NCBI GenBank assembly: GCA_965649765.1
Contig: OZ287753.1
Location: 23,312,001-23,376,000 of the forward strand
Direction: 5' to 3'
DNA from: Bispira polyomma
Taxonomy: Eukaryota
DNA length: 64,000 nucleotides
The notes under the pieces are model-generated. The model was given only the letters and a program-made list of their open reading frames with translations. It had not been told where the DNA came from and ran no database searches. The translations under genes were made by a program, and so were the position numbers. Shown here piece after piece: positions 12,680 through 56,156 of the stretch; within the stretch, counting starts at the first letter, position 1; every line of letters starts with the position of its first letter.

Positions 12680-15600
12680 AGCTTAATTTAATGTTAATGT
12701 TTTTACTTCTACAGCGCCACAATCGATGACCAGGCATCCTCTGTGGCGCATATCCTAGTAAGTGTGCAAGAGCATAGTCCAGTAGACAGAAAAAGGTTCG
12801 CGATCAGAGATTCAGTCGTGACCATCAGATGTATGCTAAGGTGGGAAAGCGAGCTGATACAGATGTGTTTTGAGTCTTTTTCTGAAACCCATGATGCTTG
12901 TCTCAGTCCAAAGACTGGTAGGGAAGCTATTCCACTCAGCAGGTGCTGCAACTAAGAATGATTTTGAACCAGCTTGTTTTTTTGGTAGGAAACCAGAGGT
13001 GGAGAGACAAAATCAGAAATTGCCTCGGGTGAGATTGCTGAGAGACAGCATAGATGATAAATAGGCAGGTTGATGTACATGAACTATCTTAAAAATGAGG
13101 ACAATTACCTTAAATTTAATACGAAACTCAATAGGTAACAAATATAATTGTTTCAGCAGGGGAGTAGTGTGAGTGCGAGGGCCAATATGGTTAACTATTC
13201 TGCACAGGTTATTTTGTATTTTTTGTAGTTTGTTTATTTGTCCCTTTCCAATTCCATATAGTAGTGAGTTACAATAATCTAGCCGACTTGACACCAGGGC
13301 GTTTGCCACTGCAATGGCATTTTCTTGGGTTAAATGTCGTCGAATCCTGCTAAAGTCACGGATGTTGCCGTAGCAGGAACGATAAATATTCGAGACATGT
13401 TTTTTGAAGGAGAAGTCAGTCAAAAGTAACTCCTAGGTTCTTGGCACTGTCAGCTGGAACAGTGCTGTTACCAAGGAGAGTAGCAGGGAAGAAGTCAAGA
13501 ACCTTCTCCCTGTGATGTTTGGAGCCAATAAGTAGGAATTCTGTTTTGTCAAGGTTGAGTTTCAATTTTGAATTACTCATCCAAGATTCAATCGAAGACA
13601 GGCAGCTAGAAAGCTGTTCAAGGATCTGAGAACAATTTTTGGGAGTGAGGGAGCAGTAGATCTGTGTGTCATCTGCATAGAAATGATAGCTAATATTGTG
13701 GTGTGAGGATATTATACTTGTAGGGGAGTAGTGAACAGTGAAAACATAAGGGGCCCTAGGACAGAACCTTGAGGGACACCGAAAGGGAGATCATAAGGAG
13801 ATGACTTAGCTCCGTTGACCCTGATGATTTGATCACGGCATTCAAGATAGGCTTCAATCGATAGAAGAACCGAGTCAGATAGCCCGAACCAAGAATTAAG
13901 ACATTCGGGAAGTATCTTGTGGTCAATTGTGTCAAATGCAGCAGACAAATCAAGGAGGGTGAGGGCAGCCACACCACCCCTATCTAAGATTATATTGATG
14001 TCACTGCTAATTTTTAGAAGTGCTGTTTCAGTCGAGTGGAATTTTCTGTAGGCAGACTGGTGTGTATTTCTCATATGGTTGTGTACAGGTGTTCGTTTAA
14101 TTGGAGAGCAACAGCTTTTTCAATCAATTTTGAAACAAAGCTTAGATTTGATACTGGTCTGTAGTTTTTAAGGTTATTTCTGTCTAGATTTGGCTTTTTG
14201 AGTATGGGGGTTACATTAACAGTTCTGAACGATTTGGGGAAGCAGCCCTCTTGGATTGAGTAGTTTATAATGTTTGTGATTGGAGTTAATAGGATATCTG
14301 CACAATCCTTCAGTAAGGAAGTTGGGATAGGGTCTAGGTCACATTGTTTGGAAGGAGATGAAGTAATGATTTTGAGGATTTCATCTCTGCTGAGTGTTCT
14401 GAACTTTTTTAAGGTAGCTCGTTTGTATGGTGGAGTTGGGGTGTTGAGAGAGGTAGATGCTTTGAAAGCGATACGAATTTTATCAATCTTTCCTGAAAAA
14501 TATTTTCAAAATGAATTTGCAGCTTCAGAAAAGTTGTTACAGTCCGGTAGAATTGGATCTGTAACCTTATGAAGTATCTTCTTCACGGATTGCCAAAATT
14601 TCCTTGAGTCTGTGCAACTTCTTGAGATGAGAGAATCGTAGTGATCTTTCTTAGCCTTTGACAAGAGCCTATTGTGATGGTTGACAGCTGTTCTGTAGTG
14701 TGACCTATCAACCCTGGATTTAGTGTGGCGCCATATTTTCTCCAGGAACCGTATCCGCTTTTTGGCAGTGAGGATTTCCGGAGTAATTCAGCTGCAATCT
14801 GGGTGGGACAAAACGTTTTTTTCCCGAAGGGGGGCATGATTGTCTATGATGTCTCTCAGGACAATTTTGTATTGATCACACAGATCAATGGCATTAGTCT
14901 TTGGGTTTCTGAGAATTTCGGAGGATGCGATGTCACTTTTAAACTTGTCAATGTTGACTTTATTAATATTTCTAAACTTGATAGTTTTACCCATTGTGTA
15001 TGTGTGCGGAAATTTGATGTGGAGGCCGACAGTGAAATGGTCAGAAACACCCTCGGTCACGAATGATTCAACTAAGAGAGGGGAGTCTGATTTTGTTATT
15101 ACCAAGTCCAAAATGTGACCATGAATGTGGATTGGTTTGGTGATGTGTTGGGTGTAATCGAATCTGGTAAGTAGTTCTGTGAAGTCTGTAGACGAGCTGT
15201 CACCTTTGTCCATAGGGATGTTGAAATCACCTGTTATTAACGTCTCAAGAGATCTAGTATTAATTATTTCCATGAGATCTATCCAGTCAGAGGCAAAGGA
15301 AGATTTTGAGAGACATGGTGGCCTGTAAACCGTCAAGAGGCAAAAGGAAAAAGAACCATGAATAATTTTTAGGTAGATGGATTCAAAAGAGGCAAAATAA
15401 GGAAGACTGATTTCAGTGACATTGAAAATCTTTTTCACAAAGACGCCAACTCCACCGCCTCTTCTGTCTTTACACGGCTTCTGAAAGAAATTGTATGTAG
15501 GGGGGGTGATACTAGCCAGAAAAGAGTCTGTCATTTTTTCCGATCCATGTTTCAGTGATACCTGCTATGTCAAGTTTGTTGCTGAGAATACTGTTCACAA

Positions 15601-16300
15601 CTGAGGGGCCCTTGTTCCTGATGGACCTGGCATAAAAGATGCCAATTTTCAATGAATTTTTAGTGAAGCATTTAGGGCAGGATTTACCTGGATGTCACCA
15701 GACAGGGACAGTAGAAGAAACGACCAGAATGGAAAAACATGTGGAGTTTTATTTGAGAAGAATGAATTTTTTCTCTGACAGAGAATGGCCACAGTTTTAT
15801 TTGAGAAGAATGAATTTTTTCTCTGACAGAGAATGGCCACATGCGCTTTGTCAAGAGAGAAAATTAATGAGGGTTGTATCCAGGGTTTATATGGTGACAG
15901 AGATTCCTCTTCGGCCGTGACCAATCTGATCGAGATGAGGACCATCGCACAAAAAACATGTACTAGGTGCATAGTTAATTTACTAGAAGTTGAATTTAAG
16001 AAAATGCTCAGAAAATTCAAACACAACAAAGCACTCCCGACCAAGCAGAGTGGACGCCAATAAAAAGGAAAAAAAGCCAAATAGGAAAAAAAAGCTACTA
16101 GAATACTGTAAGACAACTCGACAGCCAAAAAAGAGGAAAAGCTAATAGAATACTGTAAAACAACTCAACAGCACATCCGACCAAGCGGAGTGAGCAATTA
16201 TATGGTATAAAAATTTGGCGGCAAGTGATTCAAGAAAACAGCTCAGAAAAATTCAGACACAATACAGCACTTCCAACTAAGCAGAGTGGACGCCAATATA
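12680..16300 (-). mobile_element. Near-full-length ORF2 of an L2/CR1-clade LINE (APE endonuclease + RT), frameshifted
   Basis: EN motifs ITETW, GGGV, GDFN and SDH (14788-15650); RT motifs [43 protein letters not shown] and SRLDYCNSLL. The 3' tail has a GCGCCACA/TGTGGCGC stem-loop and (ACATTA)-like repeats at ~12684-12750. Confidence 0.93.
15745..15840. repeat. 48-bp in-frame tandem duplication in the LINE leader ORF
   Basis: AGTTTTATTTGAGAAGAATGAATTTTTTCTCTGACAGAGAATGGCCAC occurs twice; it reads AILCQRKNSFFSNKT x2 on the minus strand. Confidence 0.9.
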
Positions 16301-22597: not shown

Positions 22598-22836
22598 CTG
22601 GTCAGCCAGTGAATTTCGCCACCCACTAGCGAATTTCGCCACCCACTAGAAAATTTCGCCACCCGAAATAAACCAGTTTAGAAATTGTTTTTCTGGAATT
22701 AATTGAATGTAAAATGTTGTATTATGCATAAACTATTGGTTTATGAATTCAAAATCACGAAATTACTGCCATATAGTGTCAAAAAAACGTCAAGTGGCGA
22801 AATTCACTGGCCAGCGAAATTCACTGGCTGAGTGGT
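22598..22836. mobile_element. MULE-like MITE with GAATTTCGCCAC subterminal repeats
   Basis: TCAGCCAGTGAATTTCGC at left is inverted as GCGAAATTCACTGGCTGA at right, with tandem AATTTCGCCACCC motifs. Confidence 0.7.
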
Positions 22837-23637
22837 AAATAAAACAAAAAGGGCTATAATTCCTAAACTAACAGATAACTTAACAAAATAAATTTTGCCC
22901 CATCTATAAGACATAACAAGTACACACAAAAAGTTTTAGTCAAAAAGTCCCAAAAATGAGCGACTCCAGCTTGTCCTTGCAAATCACTAGGGGTATTCAG
23001 TAAGTCATGTTATTACAACAGAAATCTCACACCGGAACTCCGTTCCAGTATGAGGCATCTGCTGCAAAAAAATGACAGTGTAATAGTTAAATGGAAGTAA
23101 AAATGTATTGTTGTTATTCTGGACAAGAGCCTAAAAATAGGATTAACTAGCAATTTTAAAAACAAATGATGTGGTCATAATTTTAATACCAATAATATAC
23201 AAGGTGCCATGCCAAAGAGTGTCCCACTTTGTTGGCAGCACCAGTATAACATTAAAGCTATACTCCTTGTACTGATGAATTATATCATGCAGTGGGGAAA
23301 ATTATTGTACATTATAGGTGGTACCGGTAAATTTAATGGAAAACTGGTTTAATTTAGGAAAGCCAAGCAAATTTAGCTGTTCCCATGAATTGGCATATTT
23401 ATTGGAAATTTTCAGTAAGATGGAAAAGAAATTGTAAGAAAATGAAACTCCAGGTACAGGTTACCATTGTCATGGTATCAGAAAAAGTAAATTTATCCTT
23501 GGACAAATAATTGTTGCTCATTGCTTTGCACCAGTGAAGTTTCACATAAGAAGTTGTGAGTTTCTTGAGTCTCAATTTTGATATGACATTTTAAGGCATA
23601 TATTACTGTTTGCAATATGTCATTAACTCGTAAACAA

Positions 23638-23732
23638 CAACTATCGTGGGGATGCCTGTAGCATCTAACTCAACTTTATCGATTAGATGTTGCCACCACC
23701 TGATGAGACTTATTGAGAGGTCGAAATAGTTG
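23638..23732 (+). ncRNA. Type III hammerhead ribozyme
   Basis: Stem III CAACTAT (23638-44) / ATAGTTG (23726-32); cleavage triplet AUC (C23645); stem I GTGG / CCAC extended by GTAGCATCTAA / TTAGATGTTGC; core CTGATGA (23700-06); stem II GACTT / AGGTC with loop ATTGAG; GAAA (23723-26). Confidence 0.88.
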
Positions 23733-24067
23733 ATTATCTAAGTCCTATTTCCAGTTATCTTTGTCTTCCAAGGTCATACTAAAACCAAAGTCATGAAGAC
23801 TAAAGGATAAGAGTTAAAGTAATTTTCCAACTTTTATTATGATTGAAAATTCAATCAACTGCCAGCTTTCTTCTAGCAAATTACAAGTGCCACCTAGCGA
23901 GTGGATTTGATAGCACAAATGCTCCCTCCTAAGGTGACATTATACATAGATGCCTACACCACTACATGCAAGTAACACATAGTACTGTTTAAAAAACTAA
24001 TATTCAATTATATATTCCCTAAGAAGTGTCACCGTAAAACATCATCACAAAAGTAAAAGTACATTAC

Positions 24068-24285
24068 AGGGGTGGACAGCTTAGCGGACGGGACAGCGAC
24101 AGTAACTTAAAACATAAAATTTGTTGCATTTAAAAAGCCATCTGTAAAATATTAAGTACTTATCAGACTAATTTATTTAGTAAGACAAACTTTACATTTA
24201 AAATCGGTCAGACTGGGCAAATGGATTAACTGGGCACATTTGAAGTTACTGTCCGCTAAGCTGTCCACTAAACTGTCCACCCCTG
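24068..24285. mobile_element. TA-flanked MITE
   Basis: TIRs CAGGGGTGGACAG / CTGTCCACCCCTG flanked by TA; internal inverted GGACAGCTTAGCGGAC. Confidence 0.8.
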
Positions 24286-24829
24286 TACATGATATCCAAC
24301 TCTATGAGTGCATAATAGAAAGTCATTTGGATAGTCTAATAATTTTATGATAAGAAAGTAAAACATTATACAGGTTTACCATATGGTTAAGTCTGGTACT
24401 CTCAGCATTATTTTTGAGCCCAATAGAAGCTCTCTGATACATTAAGGAATAAATAAGATAAGAATCTGGCGGCCTTCGGGCAGCACCATTTGTGAATACT
24501 GCGCATACGATATTCCGAAATTTGCTAGTCCACCATCACTGACAAAGTCACAGTCCTTAGGGTCGGTCTTCAGTGGGCGATAATTAAATAACTTCCTCAA
24601 ATCTGCGGTGGCAGTAGACATATACACTGGTCACGCTAGTTCATGTTACTTATCTTTACAATGTACATAAAACAATAAAATAATTTAAAACGGGTCGCCC
24701 TAAACGACAAAAACGATCAGTGACGAATTTCAACTTAAAGTTTCTCAGCGAAGCAATTCTACTTTACCGGTACGAGATTTCAACAAGTATATCTTACCAT
24801 AAACGTCTTCTTTGCTTTTGCTTTCTTTA

Positions 24830-26130: not shown

Positions 26131-28625
26131 AATCATGCTATCCTGAAGATAGTAAGGGGGGGGGGGGTATAGTGAAAAAAGCATGGTAACCTTGGTTACA
26201 TCATGGTTAAATCTTGTAGACAGGGTAATCTTAGAACTTGCTAGGATTTCAGCTTTCATATTTGGCATACCAACTGTGTCTGTTTCAGTGACGATACATT
26301 TATACTTTGGTGTTAATACAGCTAGAAATAAGTGAGCAACAGCCATTTTCTGTTTTTAGGATCGTGAGCTTTGATTAAGGGTATATTACCGCCCATTTCC
26401 TGTCTCTCAGTTTCTAGAATGATCTCCTCAGCTGGTTCATTGATGGATTGTTTTTATTGTTTTTGTGAATGAACGTAGAGTACGTAGTAAGATCACATGA
26501 TCTTCTGAGCATGCGCAGTGACACACTCTTGGTTAATCATTACACAAGACATTGCTAGAACCTTCTTTTCTTTGATATTTCCGGAAACAACTACGTCATT
26601 TGTCTGGGATTGCCTTCAAAATACCGCGAAAACCATAAAAAATTTAAATAAAATTATAAATAAGATACGTTATTTAAGGAAATAAATCTAAACCTTCTAC
26701 TTCATAGATGTTTTCGCAATTAATTGAACTACATTTTGAAATATTTCATAACATCAAAGTGAAGTTAAATCACAGTTTCTAACAGATCTCGGCTCATTTA
26801 TATGTCCCAGATACCTTTCATTTATCTGGAAATCCTCAGACTCGTTTTGGCTGTGTATAAGCAATGAAGTAAGATTGGGGAAAAAATAGAAATATGTGAA
26901 CACATAAACTTAATGGATTATTATTTGGATTATACCAAAATGGTGTTTGCAAAAGTTTCTGGTTTGATTAAGATTTTCGCAGCCGTTGGATAAGATACAG
27001 AAATATTTTTAAATGGAGACTTCAAGCTTATATGACATTCCCTAAAAAATAAAAAGTAAAATATGTGAAGGCATGACCTTCATTGTTGTTTGTATTAAAC
27101 AGAATCACATAAGCAAAGGTACTGTGAATCCTATCTGGCAGTCATTTAAATTTCTTCTTTACGGATTTTGAAGTTTTTATATATATTTTCAACATCGATG
27201 AATTGGTTCCGCAAAAATATCCTGCAAAAAAACTGAATTTTACTTAGTATTTACTGCAGTGAATGGCTGTACCTTCATCAATATTTAACCCTAAGTTTTT
27301 GTATCACCGGAAAGCTATGATTTTGTGCTTTTCGACAGTCCAAACAGTTTCCAGATCCAATGAATATTAGTTGAGCTTTGTAAAGAAATCGTTGTATTCA
27401 TCTTAAAAGTTAAAAATAAATAGGCATTGATCAAATTTCTCTGTAATTGTTTAGGCTAAAATTGATATATCATGAAAGAGCAATGAATACACTTTCTGAC
27501 CCTTTTTACAGAATAGAATTTCCTTCAATGTTGACTGAGATAGTAGTCTTTATATTATGCATACATATTTTACTGTGAAATTTATTTGGCAGTCATTGGT
27601 ATTTTATTGTCACGAGAAATCTGCGTACCGAACGATCCATATTACATCTGAAACGTGAACTTGGAAACTATTTATTTAAAGTTTGCCAAATAATATGTAG
27701 TAAAATATGTAAAGATACAACTTTCTTTGTTGTTAGGATTATATAAAATGACAATATAGGTGTAGTTTCTATTTATATACTGATACCGCAGAGTCAGATT
27801 TGGTCATGAAAGTTAGTCGATAAAATTTGTTCTTAGCCAAATGTCCTGTTAGCGTACGCTTCCTGTTGACGGACAACAATTCTACAAGCAAATCTCTTTT
27901 TTGGGTAGCAGAAAAAATAAAATAAGGACATAAACGGCAGTCTGATCTTTCATATGTATTATCGCCCACAGAAGGCGGCCGCTGTAGTGATTGTGTCCTT
28001 GTCAATTTCGACCACTATCTACTGACTGGTTCACTATTTTTGGACTCGTTAACTCGCTTTGTAGTGGCATCATCATGATGTGGCCGCCAGGTTGGTTGTA
28101 TACAAGAGACGGCTAACAGAAGTCATAGAGATACAATGGAGGAAATGTTCTGCCGGTCAAGGGAAACAGAAAGGTATCTCAAGTTCAGTAACAACATTTG
28201 CCACTTTGTGTGCTGACCTTGGAGGTAATCAATTGACCGAACATGAATGTAATCGAATATTAAGAAACAGGGACAAAAATGACATGTAAAATCAGTGTGC
28301 ATAAGCAAATATCTTGGGATAAACCTTAATGTAAACCCAGCACTATTTTGTATGGTATAATAATAGCACTAGTGTTACAAAGAGTATAGATAGTAACATT
28401 TTATATTTGTGTAGGATAATCTCATCAAGACAGTAGACTAGATAGTAAAAAATTAGGCTTGGAAATACAAGATTCCACATGTACTATTTTTCTTCAAAAT
28501 ACATTGGTTGGTCAAACTGTCACAGATAATATCAATTCTACAACAATGAAGAGTAATGCAAAGATAAGACTACCTTAAGTTATATCTTTACTTAATTCAT
28601 GGTATGAAAATATGTTTGAATATAA

Positions 28626-41489: not shown

Positions 41490-44400
41490 ATGGAGGGATT
41501 TGAGGAGAATTGTACAATGCATGGTATCAAACAAAGCTGTTCCAAACAAGTAGGCCAAACCAGGAAGGTAGTGTGGATTATTATTGTAACTGGCATGGTG
41601 TTTGGAATGGGTGGATTGGTGATTCAGACACTCGTTAATTATTTCAAGTAAGTTCACATTTATAGTATAATGTATAAAGAAAAACATTGCTCATATAACT
41701 TTACTAATTTGGCCAGTGTTTTATTGCAATAACTATTTTTTATGATGGACTTTTCCAGATTTTAACATCCACATGATTAAAAGTCAATATTTTAGCTTCA
41801 GAGATTAGATATCATCACCAGTATTAGATCATTGTCTTGTGTTAACTTAATAAATAGAACAAGTGACTGTGTAAATCCTTTTTTACATAATATGCAAACT
41901 TCAAAAGACCAGGTACAAAAAGGTCATACAATTTCTAAAATGTTGGAACATTCTGCATATCAATGAAATGCTTAAAATCTGAAATTTGTCTTGATGTATA
42001 TTATATAACAAATAGAAACCATTGATACATTTTTTAAAACAGATTCTATTTCAGCTGCCAGTGCATGTTTCCCAAATATCTAAAATTATTCATTGTGCCA
42101 ATTTTCTCAATTTTGCAGAACTTTTAGCTTTTTTGTTATCCACATAATGTATCACACAAATTAAAACAAGATATTTGAGAAACAAAAATTAATGTAAAAC
42201 GGGACCAGTTCTTTTCAAATATTGATTTAACCCCATTTAATATCTGACCATTCTATGAATTTTATCCTAGTAAACTTATTTATGTTTATGCCCAGTTCTG
42301 TTGGTTGGTTGCTTACAAGAATTACACAAAATGTTACTAAACCGATTTAGATGAAACTTGGTGGAGGAATTGGTCATGGACCACAGAATGAAGAATTCAT
42401 TGGATTTTGAGGCAGCTATGGTGTTATGGGCAGAACCAAAAACGTTTTTTTTTACTTTTTGGCACCGTGATATATTGGCAGAGGTATGAGCTTTACCGAG
42501 TGCAAATTAAGTAATGTTAAAATGTTCAAGTCAATGATGTTTGAACATCTAGAAATTACAAAAATGTCTTGATGCTTTATGAATCCATATAAAATTTTTA
42601 AATCAAACATAACCATTCTAAATGAATACAAAATTGTATTTGTAAGCTAGTGCAAGTGGCAGTGGTGGTTTTATACAGTAACAGTTTCATCATTTTTTCA
42701 TGGCAGCATACAGCAGATGACTTGCATCCTACTACTGAATTTTGGATGAAAAGGGATAGTCTCAAAATATAGGAATATTTCAGGCACCCTCGGAATCATG
42801 GTTAGGGTCCATGTAAATACTTGGAAGTAGGCAGGGCGGTTGGTAGAAAACTATCTTGTGTACTGGAGGATTATCTGGTCCCACATCCACATGCGTATTT
42901 TAAAATGTTCTCAGCAACGGATGACCTTTTTTTATTTGTTGGCTGTAATTTTTACATTGATTATCTGTAAGCATAATAAGAAGAAAAAGGTGAGTTCCCC
43001 AACAGTAACAGATATAATGTAAAACCCAATTTAATCCTATTTTAAAAGCAATTGACAAGAACATCAAAATCACTGGTTATATCTATATTTGTTAGCCATT
43101 TACTTTGATATAACCATAATGGGGGCTGTCAAGTTGGTATTTGTATTTTCAATCTATAATTTCGGTATTAAGTAATAGAGACTGGCAGAGACCAAATCAA
43201 CATTCCATAAAACTACTTCATGGCACAACGAATTTGTACAGGTTTACAATGCCATTGTTAAAGCAAAAAATGGGACGTATTTTGAACTATAACCTCTGAA
43301 ACATTTTTGTCCATGTGGTATATATATCTGAATCAGATGTTACATATTTGTCTGATCATGTGTATGTAAACCAATTCTGTCACAGAAATAAAATCTGTAA
43401 AATGTGCAAAGGCTAGAGTATTAGGTTACCTTCTTAATACAAGGCCTTAGCAAATGCAGTTTATAATAGAATAAATTTGTAATAAATATATATAATATTT
43501 GTAATACTTATTTCCAGGTATGACTCCTACACCACTTCACAAAAGATCTGGAATGACACATTGGAACTCCCTGGTATAACCATCTGCAACTTTAACAAAG
43601 TGTCCAGAGCCAACTATGATGTTCTTACGCAGCAACTCTACTTTGTCTATGGCCAGGCAAATCAAACAGAGGCAATTGCAGAGCTTTGGAAGCAGACCAA
43701 TGGCACTCCAATGATACTGGAGCCTTACTTTACTATTGATAACTCTGTAGGACAACCCATTGACAGACTATTGGCTTGGTGTATGTTCTCAAAGAAACCT
43801 TTCACATGTATGGATTATTTTACTCCAGTGATCACAGACGGGGGACTTTGTGCATCATTTAATGCCAAACCTCACAGGAATTCTTTGAAAACATTGTTAG
43901 TCCAACAGCCAGGTTATTATTATTATTATTATATTTATTACTTAGCGTGCATATAAATATAAGGGTTTTACTGTTCATATACTCTTGTTTTCCCACAAAA
44001 GCTACAAAAGAGTAGCTTCATAATGCTCGTGATATGTGGTGACTATGTTAAATTGGCATCCAGTAGCACCATATTTTACTTGAATGTACATTTAATTTTT
44101 TAAGGTATATAGCACGATAGTTTTGCTGAAAAGATTTATTCAAGGCTTCATTCATTTTTAAAAGTATTCTTTATTGATGTTTTCCCCAAGAACGGTTATT
44201 TGTTAACAACAAATTTCATGACTAAGTCAAGAAATACAACATATTCCCTTTACATGCTATAATAATTAAGTGTTATCTTATTTTCTGATGGAACAGGAAG
44301 CGATTTTTCTCTGCAACTTGTGTTAGATCTACACAATGAAGATGCCTTGAGACTACATCAAACAGACAAAACACTTGGAACCGGAGTAGAAGTGTTAATT

Positions 44401-45075
44401 CATCATCCAAGCAACTTCCCGTTTATGGCCAGCAATCCACTTCAGCTTTCTCCTGGGCATCAGCATTTTATTGCAGTTCAGTCATCTCATGTCCATCGCC
44501 TGTCTGAACCCTATGCCACAAGCCCATGCAATTCCGAAAAGTACTATGACTTTAATGAATGTGTTTATTATTGTCAGTTGAATACTCAGTTTGCCCAGTG
44601 TGATTGTAATGTACACAGTTCTCAACTCGATAATACCTGCTCATATTATAATGGAATAATGGATTGTTATGACATTGATATTAAGGACTACTATGAAGCG
44701 AGCTGTAACTGCAGTCCGGCATGTTCATCTTATAAGTATAGTTTCAGGCATAGTTCTATTAGTTTGCCATCTATGGCAACCATTGATGACTTTGTCAGAA
44801 TAACAGGCATAAACAGAACAGATTTGCAAGATATTCAAGAAAACATTGTTCATTTACAAATTTATTTTGAATCAATGGAATACCATGTTATTACAGAAAC
44901 TCCTGCAGTTAAGATATATGACTTAATTGGTAACATTGGGGGGCTTCTCGGTTTTTTTCTGGGAGCTAGCTTGATAACTCTCCTAGAATTGTGTGAACAA
45001 AGTTTTATTTGTTCTTACAAAACAGCACTTAAGAAGAAAACTGTCACAAAAGTGACTGTAATGCCTCAAAACTAG
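41490..45075 (+). CDS. DEG/ENaC (ASIC/degenerin superfamily) sodium channel subunit, paralog A; exons 41490-41647, 43518-43912, 44297-45075; 443 aa
   Basis: Spliced GT-AG exons stay in frame (158+395+779 = 1332 nt). N-terminal FEENCTMHG (HG motif), TM1 VVWIIIVTGMVFGMGGLVIQ, LPGITICNFN, TDGGLCASFN, Cys-rich thumb, and TM2 GNIGGLLGFFLGASLITLLE with the GAS filter. Confidence 0.93.
41983..42880 (+). repeat. ~0.9-kb duplicate of 37107-38000 inside intron 1 of paralog A
   Basis: AAATTTGTCTTGATGTATATTATATAACAAAT...TGGAGG(G/A)TTATCTGG is collinear in both places and absent from intron 1 of paralog B. Confidence 0.85.
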
Positions 45076-53742: not shown

Positions 53743-56156
53743 ATGGAGGGATTTGAGGAGAATTGTACCATGCATGGCATCAAACAAAGCTGTTCCAAAC
53801 AAGTGAACCAAGCAAGGAAGATTGTGTGGATTATTATTGTAACTGGCATGGTGTTTGGAATGGGTGGATTGGTGATTCAAACACTCGTGAATTATTTCAA
53901 GTGAGTGAACATTTATAGTATAATGTATCAAGGAAAAACATTACCCATATAGCTTTACTAATTTGACTAGTGTTTAATTGCAATAAATATTTTTCATGAT
54001 GCACTTTTCCAGATTTTAACATCCACAAGCTGTAATTTTTACATTGAATATCTGTAAGCATAAAAAAGAAAAGAGTGAGTTCCCTGACAGTAACAGGTAT
54101 AATGTAATACCCGGTGTAATCCCATATTAAAATCAATTGACAAGAACATTAAAATTACAGGTTATATCTATATTTGTTGGCCATTTACTTCGATATAACC
54201 ATAATGGTGACTGTCAAGTTGGTATTTGTATTTTTCATCTATAATTTTGGTTTAAAGTAGGAGGGACCTGCAGAGATCAGATAACCATTCCATTAAAATA
54301 TTTTATGGCAGAACAAATTTGTACAGGTTTACATTGCCTTTGTTTAAGGTAAATTTGTCATATTTAAACATTCTGAACCTCTGAAACATTGTTGTACATG
54401 TACTATATATATCTGAAACAGCTGTTACATATTTGACTGATTATATGTATTGTAAACCAATTTTGTTACAGAAATAAAATCACTAAAATGTGCAAATGCT
54501 AGAGTATTAGCTTACCTATATATAATATTTGTAATACTTATTTCCAGGTATGAGTCCTATACCACTTCACAAAAGATCTGGAATAACACATTGGAACTCC
54601 CTGGTATAACCATCTGCAACTTTAACAGAGTGTCCAGAGCCAACTATGATGTTCTTATGCAGCAACTCTACTTTGTCTATGGCCAAGCAAATCAAACAGA
54701 GGCAATTGCAGAGCTCTGGAAGCAGACCAATGGCACTCCAATGATACTGGAACCATACTTTACTATTGATAACTCTGTGGGACAACCCATTGACAGATTG
54801 TTGGCTTGGTGTATGTTCTCAAAGAAACCTTTCACATGTATGGATTATTTTACTCCAGTGATCACAGACGGGGGACTTTGTGCATCATTTAATGCCAAAC
54901 CTCACAGGAATTCTTTGAAAACATTGTTAGTCCAACAGCCAGGTTATTATTATTATTATTATATTTATTACTTAGCGTGCATATAAATATAAGGGTTTTA
55001 CTGTTCATATACTCTTGTTTTCCCACAAAAGCTACAAAAGAGTAGCTTCATAATGCTCGTGATATGTGGTGACTATGTTAAATTGGCATCCAGTAGCACC
55101 ATATTTTACTTGAATGTACATTTAATTTTTTAAGGTATATAGCACGATAGTTTTGCTGAAAAGATTTATTCAAGGCTTCATTCATTTTTAAAATTATTCT
55201 TTATTGGTGTTTTGTTTCCCAAGAAATGGTTATTTGTTAACAACAAACTTCAAAACTAAAGAATTATAACATATTTCCTTTATAGGCTATAATAATTCAT
55301 TCAGGATATAGTAATGTAATTATATAAATTTAGAAAGTGTCTTCTTATTTTCCTAAATCTATTTTCTTATTGAACAGGAAGCGATTTTTCTCTACAACTT
55401 GTGTTAGATCTACACACTGAAGATGCTTTGAGAATATATCAAACAGACAAAACACTTGGAACAGGAGTACAAGTGTTAATTCATCACCCAAGCAACTTCC
55501 CTTTTATGGCCAGCAATCCACTTCAGCTTTCCCCTGGGTATCAGCATTTTATTGCAGTTCAGTCATCTTATGTCCATCGCCTGTCTGAACCCTATGCCAC
55601 AAAGCCATGCAATTCCGATAATTTTTATGACATTAATGAATGTCTTTATCATTGTCAGTTGAATACTCAGTTTGCCAAGTGTGATTGTAATGTATACAGT
55701 TCTCAACTAGATAATGCCTGCTCATATTATAATGGAATAATGGATTGTTATGACATTGATATTAAGGACTACTATGAAGCGAGCTGTAACTGCAGTCCGG
55801 CATGTTCATCTTATAAGTATAGTTTCAGGCATAGTTCTATTAGTTTGCCGTCTAATGCAACCAGTGATGACTTTGTTAGAATGACAGGCATAAATAGAAC
55901 AGATTTGCAAGATATCCACGAAAACATTGTTCATTTACAAATTTATTTTGAATCAATGGAATACCATGTTATTACAGAAACTCCTGCAGTTAAGATATAT
56001 GATTTAATTGGTAACATTGGGGGGCTTCTCGGTTTCTTTCTGGGAGCTAGCTTGATAACTCTCATAGAATTGTGTGAACAAAGTTTCATTTCTTCTTACA
56101 AAACAGTAATTAAGAAGAAAGCTTTCACAAAAGTGACTGTAATGCCTAAAAACTAG
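53743..56156 (+). CDS. DEG/ENaC sodium channel subunit, paralog B; exons 53743-53900, 54548-54942, 55378-56156; 443 aa
   Basis: Same exon lengths, phases and motifs as paralog A; ACCATGG Kozak context; open frame through the GASLITLIE TM2 to the stop. Confidence 0.93.

What the first reader, a model, noticed from the sequence alone, without database searches (positions are those of the whole stretch)
23638..23732. Intact solitary type III hammerhead ribozyme in an animal genome
Seen: every core nucleotide (CUGAUGA, GAAA, A15.1-U16.1, AUC triplet) is present and all three helices pair. Stem III has 7 bp with open ends, stem II has 5 bp, and stem I has 4 bp, an asymmetric bulge and 11 more bp. 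Known: most animal genomic hammerheads are type I motifs in tandem retrozymes or Penelope repeats, while type III is typical of plant retrozymes and viroid-like RNAs. Inference: an undamaged single copy among heavily decayed repeats is either a young mobile ribozyme family or a domesticated RNA-processing element. Predicted cleavage is 3' of C23645.
Basis: partly seen in the sequence, partly recalled or inferred. Interest (0 to 1): 0.85.

Follow-up and report, generated by a model that had tools for sequence, protein, structure and literature searches.

The report
Transposon-borne type III hammerhead ribozyme copy
The stretch is a real, well-preserved self-cutting RNA motif (a type III hammerhead with an extra-long first helix), but it is not solitary. 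It is an old copy inside a jumping-gene family, and the same ribozyme recurs, strongly conserved, in other mobile elements of this and other organisms.

Summary
The motif at 23638-23732 is exactly as described: a full hammerhead core, a 7-bp open helix III, a 5-bp helix II, and a helix I of 4 bp, an internal loop and 11 bp. No Rfam model detects it. A single motif of this quality could arise by chance in a 1-Gb genome.

Homologues settle the question.
- The genome holds at least 14 copies in one repeat (family A, to which the window copy belongs) and 2 copies in an unrelated repeat (family B).
- Metagenome contigs from other organisms hold two more families (C and D).
- These families share only the ribozyme.
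- Across them, 96% of helix positions pair. Each of the three helices shows a compensatory change, and the outer hairpin of helix I is swapped wholesale yet stays a hairpin.
- In C and D the ribozyme is about 97% identical between copies whose flanks are 33-89% identical.

"Solitary" is therefore wrong, and domestication is unsupported. The window copy is an old, truncated, intergenic fragment of a transposon of at least 6.7 kb.

In D the ribozyme lies 350-430 nt downstream of a Helentron helicase-endonuclease gene. In C it lies 75-140 nt after a small orphan gene.

The closest known kin are the extended type III hammerheads of delta-like RNAs and insect genomes. Cleavage itself is untested. 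Earlier notes of this scan record type I Penelope hammerheads elsewhere in this genome; none that I saw records this family.

The parts
23638..23644 (+). Helix III, 5' strand (CAACUAU). U23644 is U16.1.
   Evidence: Pairs with 23726-23732. Two of its 7 pairs show compensatory changes in family C, and two others show A-U to G-U changes in family B.
23645..23645 (+). C17, the predicted cleavage site (cut 3' of this base).
   Evidence: Position follows from the hammerhead consensus. Homologues have C, A or U here and never G.
23646..23699 (+). Extended helix I. Proximal stem 23646-23649 with 23696-23699, possibly extended by G23650-C23694 with A23695 bulged. Internal loop about 23650-23657. Distal 11-bp hairpin 23658-23668 with 23683-23693. 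Terminal loop 23669-23682.
   Evidence: The proximal stem and the GGAU..CUG internal loop are conserved in families A-D. The distal hairpin differs completely in sequence between families but always pairs. There is a U-A to C-G compensatory change at pair 1.2-2.2 in family D.
23700..23706 (+). Catalytic core, CUGAUGA (C3-A9).
   Evidence: Unchanged in 13 of the 14 aligned copies that retain this stretch (one has G5 changed to A) and in every copy in the cross-family alignment.
23707..23722 (+). Helix II hairpin: 5 bp (G-C, A-U, C-G, U-G, U-A) with the 6-nt loop AUUGAG.
   Evidence: The fifth pair changes U-A to C-G in family D.
23723..23732 (+). Core GAA (G12-A14), then helix III 3' strand starting at A15.1 (AUAGUUG).
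   Evidence: GAAAUAG is unchanged in 13 of the 15 aligned copies; G12 is mutated to A in copy c4, and c8 carries a 1-nt insertion just after it.
23066..24683 (+). The family A repeat fragment that carries the ribozyme. It is old and truncated, and is interrupted by an unrelated foldback insertion at about 24069-24285.
   Evidence: Blastn against other copies gives 79-92% identity in blocks 23066-23128, 23215-23555, 23569-23842, 23844-24068 and 24286-24683. The inverted repeat is at 24065-24098 / 24254-24287.

Best explanation
The stretch is one copy of a conserved family of type III hammerhead ribozymes with an extended helix I: a short proximal stem, a conserved internal loop and a long variable hairpin. 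The family is carried by transposable elements of invertebrates.

**Shown**
- The motif is complete.
- It has homologues in two otherwise unrelated repeats of this genome and in two further element families from other organisms.
- All three helices are kept through compensatory changes.
- In the better-preserved families the ribozyme is by far the most conserved segment.
- The window copy is an old, truncated, intergenic fragment of a repeat of at least 6.7 kb. Its younger copies also contain a degraded Harbinger transposase on the other strand, 800-bp tandem repeats, and a 3' end with a 14-bp palindrome 25 nt from the terminus.

**Inferred from established hammerhead chemistry**
When the + strand is transcribed, the RNA folds into the three-way junction. 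The 2'-OH of C23645 attacks its own 3' phosphate. This leaves a 2',3'-cyclic phosphate on the upstream RNA and a 5'-OH on G23646, so almost the whole ribozyme stays on the downstream fragment.

**Inferred from context**
- In families C and D the ribozyme sits on the sense strand, 75-430 nt after a stop codon.
- In family C it lies at the 3' edge of the conserved unit. In family D, conservation between the two copies is lost right after it.
- Its likely role is therefore to cut the element's transcript free of downstream read-through. That is 3'-end definition, or a limit on expression, for a transposon-borne gene.
- One carrier (D) is a Helentron-type rolling-circle transposon. The window's family A may be a non-autonomous relative.
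- The window copy itself is most likely a functionless relic that still looks competent to cleave.
For: **Motif and chance**
The motif and its fold are confirmed. The chance rate comes from the shuffle control.

**Copies in this genome**
- 11 full-length family A copies, 3 family A copies with an internal deletion, and 2 family B copies.
- Families A and B share only the ribozyme, as a 44-45-nt match. Family B still folds as a hammerhead, with a GUA cleavage triplet and a helix I of about 105 nt.

**Homologues elsewhere**
14 metagenome contigs carry the core pattern. Twelve of them hold the complete ribozyme (10 of family C, 2 of family D), one more family D contig has it cut by the contig end, and one is an unrelated compact hammerhead. 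They match this genome only across the ribozyme.

**Structure**
- 96.3% of cells are paired, against 39-58% when the partners are slid.
- 4 pairs show changes on both sides, with at least one in each helix.
- The covariation score is 0.174, against 0.076 for shuffles.

**Selection**
- Family C: ribozyme 97.5% mean identity, against 52% just upstream, 60-89% across the ORF-bearing stretch and 33% downstream.
- Family D: a 97% identical island in flanks of about 65% identity.

**Context**
- Family D: the upstream ORF carries PIF1 helicase and Exo_endo_phos domains. It matches the C-terminus of 1,200-2,700-aa proteins that also carry OTU and Helitron_like_N domains. A 149-nt tandem repeat array follows the ribozyme.
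- Family C: a CRE/TATA promoter, an orphan ORF of about 190 aa, then the ribozyme. This layout appears in three independent datasets, with protein identity down to 44%.
- Family A: extent and Harbinger domains; 3' palindrome and T flank.
- Helentrons and their non-autonomous derivatives have a 3' palindrome 8-35 bp from the end, insert at TT and carry tandem repeats (PMC4067079). Such elements are known in oysters (PMC7492417).
Against:
- No Rfam hammerhead model reports the motif.
- The covariation rests on only four lineages.
- The young, recently amplified family A copies have A-C mismatches at helix I pairs 1.1-2.1 and 1.3-2.3. Spread of that subfamily therefore did not need an intact ribozyme.
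- The Helentron link rests on a single lineage (two contigs with the ORF).
- The closest Helentron relatives (52-61% identity) and 12 Helentron loci of this genome have no such ribozyme within the flanks fetched: 1.5 kb in this genome, 3-4 kb in the relatives.
- No RepHel ORF was found near any family A copy.
- A type III cut removes the ribozyme from the upstream mRNA and leaves no poly(A) tail, so a role in 3'-end formation is plausible but unproven.
- No conserved Watson-Crick contact between the helix I internal loop and loop II could be found.
Confidence: 0.8

Rival explanations
1. Chance hammerhead-like motif. An AT-rich repeat happens to contain CUGAUGA, GAAA and pairable flanks, and the RNA has never functioned as a ribozyme.
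For: Shuffles imply several chance motifs of this quality per 1-Gb genome. There is no Rfam hit. Within family A the ribozyme is no better conserved than its flanks: about 92% against 89%.
Against: The same motif recurs in four otherwise unalignable sequence families, with compensatory changes in every helix. In families C and D it is a 97% conserved island.
Confidence: 0.03
2. Domesticated host element. This particular copy has been co-opted to process a host transcript, in the way the Clec2 3'-UTR hammerhead or the intronic HH9/HH10 motifs of amniotes have.
For: It is one of only four copies in the genome that pass the strict motif test, although it is an old copy.
Against: It lies in a truncated repeat fragment, and its closest relative (c14b, about 90% identity) is equally intact. 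No host exon was found within about 20 kb; the neighbours are a LINE remnant and, from 43.5 kb, ASC channel exons. Identity to other copies is the same inside and outside the ribozyme.
Confidence: 0.03
3. Retrozyme-type element. The ribozyme belongs to a non-autonomous retroelement that is cut at two hammerheads and spreads through a small circular RNA.
For: Type III hammerheads are the hallmark of plant LTR retrozymes (PMC4918200, PMC7761336). Family C units are small, at about 1.1 kb.
Against: There is only one hammerhead per locus. None is found elsewhere in the 64-kb window, in up to 10 kb of flank, or twice on any metagenome contig. No direct LTR-like repeats surround it. Family A copies are at least 6.7 kb long.
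Confidence: 0.05
4. Relative of delta-like (kolmiovirus) or viroid-like RNA replicons. The ribozyme, and in family C the adjacent small basic protein gene, derive from or gave rise to circular RNA agents of molluscs.
For: Kolmioviruses of molluscs and termites carry type III hammerheads with an extended helix I (PMC7936874; bioRxiv 10.64898/2026.09.02.748743). Family C has a lysine-rich ORF of about 190 aa followed within about 100 nt by the ribozyme on the same strand. From my own knowledge, that order resembles delta antigen followed by the antigenomic ribozyme.
Against: The ORF has no detectable similarity to delta antigen or to anything else. There is only one ribozyme polarity. The units have a TATA/CRE promoter and differing flanks, as integrated DNA would. 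There was no hit in viral contigs. The GCCR/YGGC pseudoknot of the delta-like hammerheads is absent.
Confidence: 0.05

Closest known systems
Extended ('atypical') type III hammerheads of HDV-like/kolmiovirus circular RNAs and of termite and dipteran genomes (de la Pena et al. 2021, PMC7936874)
   Same: Type III topology. Helix I is built as a short first stem, an internal loop of about 6-10 nt and an extra capping hairpin. They occur as isolated genomic motifs in invertebrates.
   Different: Helix II here is 4-5 bp, not 6 bp. The GCCR (internal loop) to YGGC (loop II) pseudoknot is not present. No sequence relationship was shown. The motifs here are embedded in transposon-like repeats, next to ORFs. 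The host is not an insect.
Canonical type III hammerheads of plant LTR retrozymes, viroids and satellite RNAs (Rfam RF00008)
   Same: The same catalytic core and the same open helix III.
   Different: Those have a 6-bp helix I capped by a 6-8-nt loop, and they occur in pairs in LTRs or in both polarities of circular RNAs. Here helix I is 50-105 nt, there is a single ribozyme per element, and there is no RF00008 hit.
Discontinuous type III hammerhead in mammalian Clec2 3' UTRs (reviewed in PMC6155905)
   Same: Type III topology with a very long helix I, located downstream of a coding region on the sense strand. The position is similar in families C and D.
   Different: That one is a host gene element restricted to mammals, with a helix I of 150-1500 nt. 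This family is carried by repeats, and homology was not tested.
Type I hammerheads of Penelope-like elements and metazoan non-LTR retrozymes
   Same: Transposon-borne hammerheads in invertebrate genomes. Earlier notes of this scan report them as abundant in this same genome.
   Different: Different topology (helix I open, weak helix III, often acting as dimers), different carriers (retroelements, tandem arrays), and no sequence similarity beyond the core.
Helentrons and their non-autonomous derivatives, HINE/DINE-1 (Thomas et al. 2014, PMC4067079; oyster elements, PMC7492417)
   Same: The family D carrier encodes the helicase-endonuclease end of a Helentron protein and has a tandem repeat array. 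The family A 3' end has a palindrome 25 nt from the terminus and a T flank.
   Different: No ribozyme has been described in these elements; the literature searches found none. Subterminal inverted repeats could not be checked. Most Helentrons examined here lack the ribozyme.

Membership tests
Hammerhead ribozyme, type III | Conserved core: C3 U4 G5 A6 N7 G8 A9, G12 A13 A14, the A15.1-U16.1 pair, and H17 that is not G. | tested here: met
   Read directly at 23700-23706, 23723-23726, 23644 and 23645. The core is kept in families B, C and D.
Hammerhead ribozyme, type III | Three helices around the core, with helices I and II closed and helix III open. | tested here: met
   Helices of 7, 4+11 and 5 bp. 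The descriptor scan agrees. The MFE of families B and D gives the three-way junction.
Hammerhead ribozyme, type III | Helices maintained by covariation in homologues. | tested here: met
   96.3% of cells paired, and compensatory changes in helices I, II and III. Only four independent lineages.
Hammerhead ribozyme, type III | Score at or above the gathering threshold of Rfam RF00008. | tested here: not met
   No hit at gathering threshold or at E <= 10. I attribute this to the 50-105-nt helix I against a 54-position model.
Hammerhead ribozyme, type III | Site-specific self-cleavage giving 2',3'-cyclic phosphate and 5'-OH ends. | not testable with these tools
   Needs in vitro transcription or end-specific RNA sequencing.
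Hammerhead ribozyme, type III | Tertiary contact between helix I (loop or bulge) and loop II. | tested here: inconclusive
   A conserved internal loop (GGAU..CUG) sits at the height of loop II, but no conserved complementarity was found. The CUCAA/UUGAG pairing is specific to the window/c14b lineage.
Extended type III hammerhead of delta-like agents and insect genomes | Helix I made of a short stem, an internal loop and an extra hairpin. | tested here: met
   compared with the description in PMC7936874.
Extended type III hammerhead of delta-like agents and insect genomes | 6-bp helix II whose YGGC loop pairs with GCCR in the helix I internal loop. | tested here: not met
   Helix II is 4-5 bp. 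Its loops are AUCGAG, ACGGAG or UGUGGAGC, with no YGGC/GCCR pair across the families.
LTR retrozyme | Two type III hammerheads in direct terminal repeats 600-1000 nt apart, with a PBS and a PPT. | tested here: not met
   One hammerhead per locus or contig. No flanking direct repeats.
Non-LTR retrozyme / Penelope-like element | Type I hammerheads in tandem units or in pseudo-LTRs. | tested here: not met
   The topology is type III. There is no tandem arrangement of the ribozyme.
Helentron / HINE rolling-circle transposon (as carrier) | Rep-helicase-endonuclease ORF on the same strand. | tested here: inconclusive
   Met for family D. Not found next to family A or B copies. The 5' flanks of the young A copies could not be fetched.
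Helentron / HINE rolling-circle transposon (as carrier) | Palindrome 8-35 bp from the 3' terminus, insertion next to T, and central tandem repeats. | tested here: met
   Young family A copies have a 14-bp palindrome 25 nt from the end and a flank that starts with T in 6 of 6 copies. They carry two units of about 800 bp. Criteria are from PMC4067079.
Helentron / HINE rolling-circle transposon (as carrier) | 12-15-bp subterminal inverted repeats at both ends. | not tested
   The 5' ends of family A copies lie outside the DNA I could obtain.

The most novel reading that the evidence does not exclude
This hammerhead may be a selected, functional module of Helentron-type rolling-circle DNA transposons and of small promoter-ORF-ribozyme cassettes in marine invertebrates. 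If so, it would be the first self-cleaving ribozyme tied to a DNA transposon. It would define or limit the 3' end of the element's mRNA, and its hairpins might double as the element's 3' terminal palindrome. The same ribozyme lineage could also be the cellular pool from which mollusc delta-like RNAs drew their type III hammerheads.
Probability: 0.2. Interest if true: 0.8.

Novelty: new member of a known kind. Interest (0 to 1): 0.55.

Why it matters
- Animal genomic hammerheads are described as almost all type I and tied to retroelements. This adds a well-supported type III family with an extended helix I in a non-insect invertebrate, and Rfam models miss it.
- At least one carrier is a Helentron-type DNA transposon, and another is a compact promoter-ORF-ribozyme cassette.
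- The family gives ribozyme surveys a new covariance model to search with.
- It offers a testable case of a ribozyme placed where a poly(A) signal would be expected.
- It points to a possible cellular source for the type III hammerheads recently found in mollusc delta-like viruses.
- The window copy itself is an ordinary decaying repeat.

Tried and rejected
**Rfam**
- Scans of the window at gathering threshold, of the locus at E <= 10, of the genome with RF00008 and of homologous contigs gave no hammerhead hit.
- The genome-wide RF00008 search scored only 68 of about 110,000 candidates, so it says nothing either way.

The 5' flanks of the young family A copies and three further model hits at 41 bits could not be read, and I did not try to obtain them another way.
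- The viral contig scan gave no match.

**Helentron link**
- 12 Helentron loci of this genome and 5 loci of the closest relatives (52-61% identity) showed no ribozyme. One of those loci had only 184 nt of downstream sequence.
- The family D protein found no match near any A or B copy.

**Family C ORF**
There was no Pfam, PHROG, PDB or Atlas relative, and no match in this genome.

**ORFs near family B**
No Pfam hit.

**Kissing-loop idea (CUCAA/UUGAG)**
- The complementarity exists only in the window/c14b lineage and is not kept in the family A ancestor or in families B, C or D.
- The loop also lies at least 16 bp out along helix I.
- I consider it coincidental.

**Other readings**
The retrozyme, domestication and chance readings were rejected; see the rival explanations.

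Full report
**1. The observation**

- CUGAUGA at 23700-23706.
- GAAA at 23723-23726, with A23726 (A15.1) pairing U23644 (U16.1).
- C23645 as the cleavage nucleotide.
- Helix III: 23638-23644 with 23726-23732, 7 bp.
- Helix II: 23707-23711 with 23718-23722, 5 bp including one U-G, loop AUUGAG.
- Helix I: GUGG/CCAC (23646-23649 with 23696-23699), an internal loop, then 11 bp (23658-23668 with 23683-23693).

The MFE fold keeps helix III, the distal part of helix I and helix II (-27.3 kcal/mol, z = -2.8).

A descriptor scan that I wrote finds this as the only type III hammerhead in the window. In 300 dinucleotide-preserving shuffles of the window it found 2 looser hits and none with 4/5/7-bp helices. 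Scaled to 1.04 Gb, that allows a handful of chance motifs per genome. The motif alone therefore proves nothing.

- No family at gathering score in the window.
- No hammerhead at E <= 10 in 23540-23840.
- Nothing in the genome-wide RF00008 search, which scored only 68 candidates.
- The clear homologues found later are also missed. I read this as a limit of a 54-position model faced with a 50-105-nt helix I.

**2. Not solitary**

A search of the window's own 1.04-Gb assembly with 23560-23830 returned 21 matches. Alignment, two pattern searches and a purpose-built covariance model agree on the following:
- 11 full-length copies of one family (A).
- 3 family A copies on C14 with a 33-nt deletion that removes CUGAUGA.
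- 2 copies of a second family (B; C13:3284404 and C5:13152028).
- 3 further hits at 41 bits that I could not read.

Eight family A copies are 95-98% identical to each other over at least 6.7 kb. The window copy matches them at only 79-89%, in blocks from about 23239 to 24683 (23066 against its closest relative c14b). It then stops, and a 92-nt piece reappears inverted at 26215-26304. It is an old, truncated, rearranged member, and its closest relative is the copy on C14:22.32 Mb (c14b).

The young copies contain:
- a degraded Harbinger (HTH_Tnp_4 and DDE_Tnp_4) transposase on the opposite strand;
- two tandem units of about 800 bp;
- a common right end in which a perfect 14-bp palindrome lies 25 nt from the terminus, with a flank that starts with T in six of six copies.

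Only four copies in the genome pass the strict motif test: the window, c14b and both B copies.
- The young A copies have A-C mismatches at helix I pairs 1.1-2.1 and 1.3-2.3.
- Copy c4 has G12 changed to A.
- Copy c8 has an inserted A in helix III.

**3. Evidence that the ribozyme is real**

Families A and B share nothing alignable except a 44-45-nt stretch of the ribozyme and an unrelated 206-nt small repeat. B nevertheless has the whole hammerhead:
- a helix III of up to 12 bp in which two A-U pairs have become G-U;
- a GUA cleavage triplet;
- the same GUGGGG...CCACCAC proximal helix I;
- a helix I of about 105 nt;
- an MFE that is the three-way junction.

One scan of metagenome contigs with the core pattern returned 14 contigs.
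- Ten form family C and three form family D. Twelve of these thirteen hold the complete ribozyme; in the third D contig it is cut by the contig end.
- One is an unrelated compact hammerhead.
- C and D match this genome only across the ribozyme.

On a 15-sequence alignment of A-D, with the helices written from the window copy:
- 96.3% of cells pair, against 39-58% when the partners are slid by 1-3 columns.
- Four pairs change on both sides: two in helix III (C-G to A-U, A-U to C-G), one in helix I (U-A to C-G) and one in helix II (U-A to C-G).
- The covariation score exceeds all 500 shuffles.
- The distal hairpin of helix I has a completely different sequence in each family but always pairs: 11 bp in A, about 15 bp in C, 11+9 bp in D.
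- The internal loop GGAU(A/G)(U/C)CUG is conserved.

Selection is visible where copies are diverged.
- Among six full family C units, the ribozyme has 97.5% mean pairwise identity. This compares with 52% in the 95 columns just upstream, 60-89% across the ORF-bearing stretch and 33% downstream.
- Between the two family D copies, the ribozyme is a 97% identical island in non-coding DNA of about 65% identity.

The caveat is that these are only four lineages.

**4. Context in the other families**

*Family D*
- The ribozyme lies 350-430 nt downstream of, and on the same strand as, an ORF with PIF1 helicase and Exo_endo_phos domains.
- That ORF matches the C-terminal 640 residues of proteins of 1,200-2,700 aa at 52-61% identity. 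Those proteins also carry OTU, DUF6570 and Helitron_like_N domains. It is therefore the helicase-endonuclease end of a Helentron transposase.
- After the ribozyme comes an A-rich run. Homology between copies is then lost, and a 149-nt tandem array follows.

*Family C*
- The conserved unit is about 1.1 kb.
- It consists of a cluster of TGACGT motifs and a TATA box, an ORF of about 190 lysine-rich residues with no detectable relatives, 75-140 nt of spacer, the ribozyme, and an end of homology 8-45 nt later.
- The ORF-plus-ribozyme pair recurs in three independent datasets (JGI, ENA ERZ27296412, SRR7133727), with protein identity down to 44%.

*Limits of the Helentron link*
- It is confined to one lineage.
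- The closest Helentron relatives and 12 Helentron loci of this genome have no such ribozyme.
- No Helentron ORF lies near any A or B copy.
[quoted passage not shown] The diagnostic subterminal inverted repeats could not be checked, because the 5' ends were out of reach.

**5. How it most likely works**

The chemistry is that of any hammerhead, and this part is established knowledge. In a + strand transcript the 2'-OH of C23645 attacks the adjacent phosphate. The upstream RNA ends in a 2',3'-cyclic phosphate, and the downstream RNA starts with a 5'-OH at G23646.

Because the topology is type III with a 7-bp helix III, nearly the whole ribozyme stays on the downstream product.

From its position in C and D (sense strand, shortly after a stop codon, and at or near the point where conservation between copies ends), I infer that the family cuts the element's own transcript. 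This would give a defined 3' end, insulate it from downstream read-through, or limit expression. This is inference only.

Two points argue for caution. An mRNA ending in a cyclic phosphate without poly(A) would be unusual. And the young family A subfamily amplified with a weakened helix I, so transposition itself does not need the ribozyme.

The window copy lies between a LINE remnant (13-16 kb) and two ASC channel genes (43.5-56 kb), with no host exon detected near it. I consider it a relic that still looks competent.

**6. Comparison with what is known**

- Reviews state that type I hammerheads typify metazoan genomes and type III typify plants and infectious circular RNAs.
- An 'atypical' type III architecture with exactly this build of helix I (short stem, internal loop, extra hairpin) was described for toad and termite delta-like RNAs. 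It was also found as isolated motifs in termite and dipteran genomes (PMC7936874).
- Type III hammerheads were recently reported in mollusc kolmioviruses.
- The present family shares that architecture but lacks the 6-bp helix II and the GCCR/YGGC pseudoknot. I therefore do not file it in that family.
- Full-text searches found no paper that links hammerheads to Helitrons or Helentrons.
- It is not a retrozyme, because there is one ribozyme per locus. It is not a Penelope-type hammerhead either; earlier notes of this scan show those are common in this genome.

**7. Verdict**

- The reading as a genuine, unusual type III hammerhead is supported.
- The readings as a single domesticated element or a small mobile ribozyme are not supported.
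- I rate it a new member of a known kind, of moderate interest.
- The open and more novel possibility is that the ribozyme is a functional part of Helentron-type DNA transposons.

**Steps not done**

Noticed in passing
L055:1-1300 (also L052, L056, L058, L061-L065, L082, L083): A compact cassette of about 1.1 kb in metagenome contigs. It has a cluster of TGACGT (CRE-like) motifs and a TATA box, then a conserved lysine-rich orphan ORF of about 190 aa (44-90% identity between copies), then the hammerhead. No relative of the ORF was found in Pfam, PHROGs, PDB or the ESM Atlas, and none in this genome.
   Followed up: partly
L053:859-916: A compact, canonical-looking type III hammerhead (6-bp helix I, 58 nt) on a 1.2-kb metagenome contig with 44% GC. 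It shares the CUGAUGAGACC...GGUCGAAAUAG core but is otherwise unrelated. Rfam did not report it either.
   Followed up: no
G000 C8:3123889-3124062, C11:2784221-2784394, C14:23689570-23689746: Three further hits of the covariance model R1 at about 41 bits (E about 1e-4), each about 175 nt long. They may be a third hammerhead family with a longer helix I. The DNA could not be fetched.
   Followed up: no
window 24065-24287: A foldback insertion of about 220 bp with 34-nt inverted terminal arms (82% complementary). It interrupts the window's family A copy and is absent from the other copies.
   Followed up: partly
window 13013-16128 (- strand): Remnant of a non-LTR retrotransposon, with ORF pieces carrying Exo_endo_phos and RVT_1 domains.
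   Followed up: partly
window 43561-45075 and 54591-56156 (+ strand): Two tandem gene copies encoding amiloride-sensitive sodium channel (ASC, DEG/ENaC) domains, about 11 kb apart. These are the nearest host-type coding sequence to the ribozyme.
   Followed up: partly
L038:6348-7859 (- strand), copy on C3:84.9 Mb: One young family A copy carries a nested 1.65-kb insertion with a reverse-transcriptase (RVT_1) ORF.
   Followed up: partly
L008/L035 (c1 positions 1203-1408), also near the family B copies: A 206-nt small dispersed repeat (86-93% identity). It is inserted just upstream of the ribozyme in the young family A copies, is absent from the window copy, and is found at unrelated places in the family B loci.
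   Followed up: no
L054:1-927 and L057:1-726: An array of 149-nt tandem repeats directly downstream of the family D hammerhead, as described for satellite-carrying Helentron derivatives of oysters.
   Followed up: partly
window 22608-22667: Three tandem copies of a 20-nt unit (AGTGAATTTCGCCACCCACT), about 400 bp upstream of the repeat fragment.
   Followed up: no
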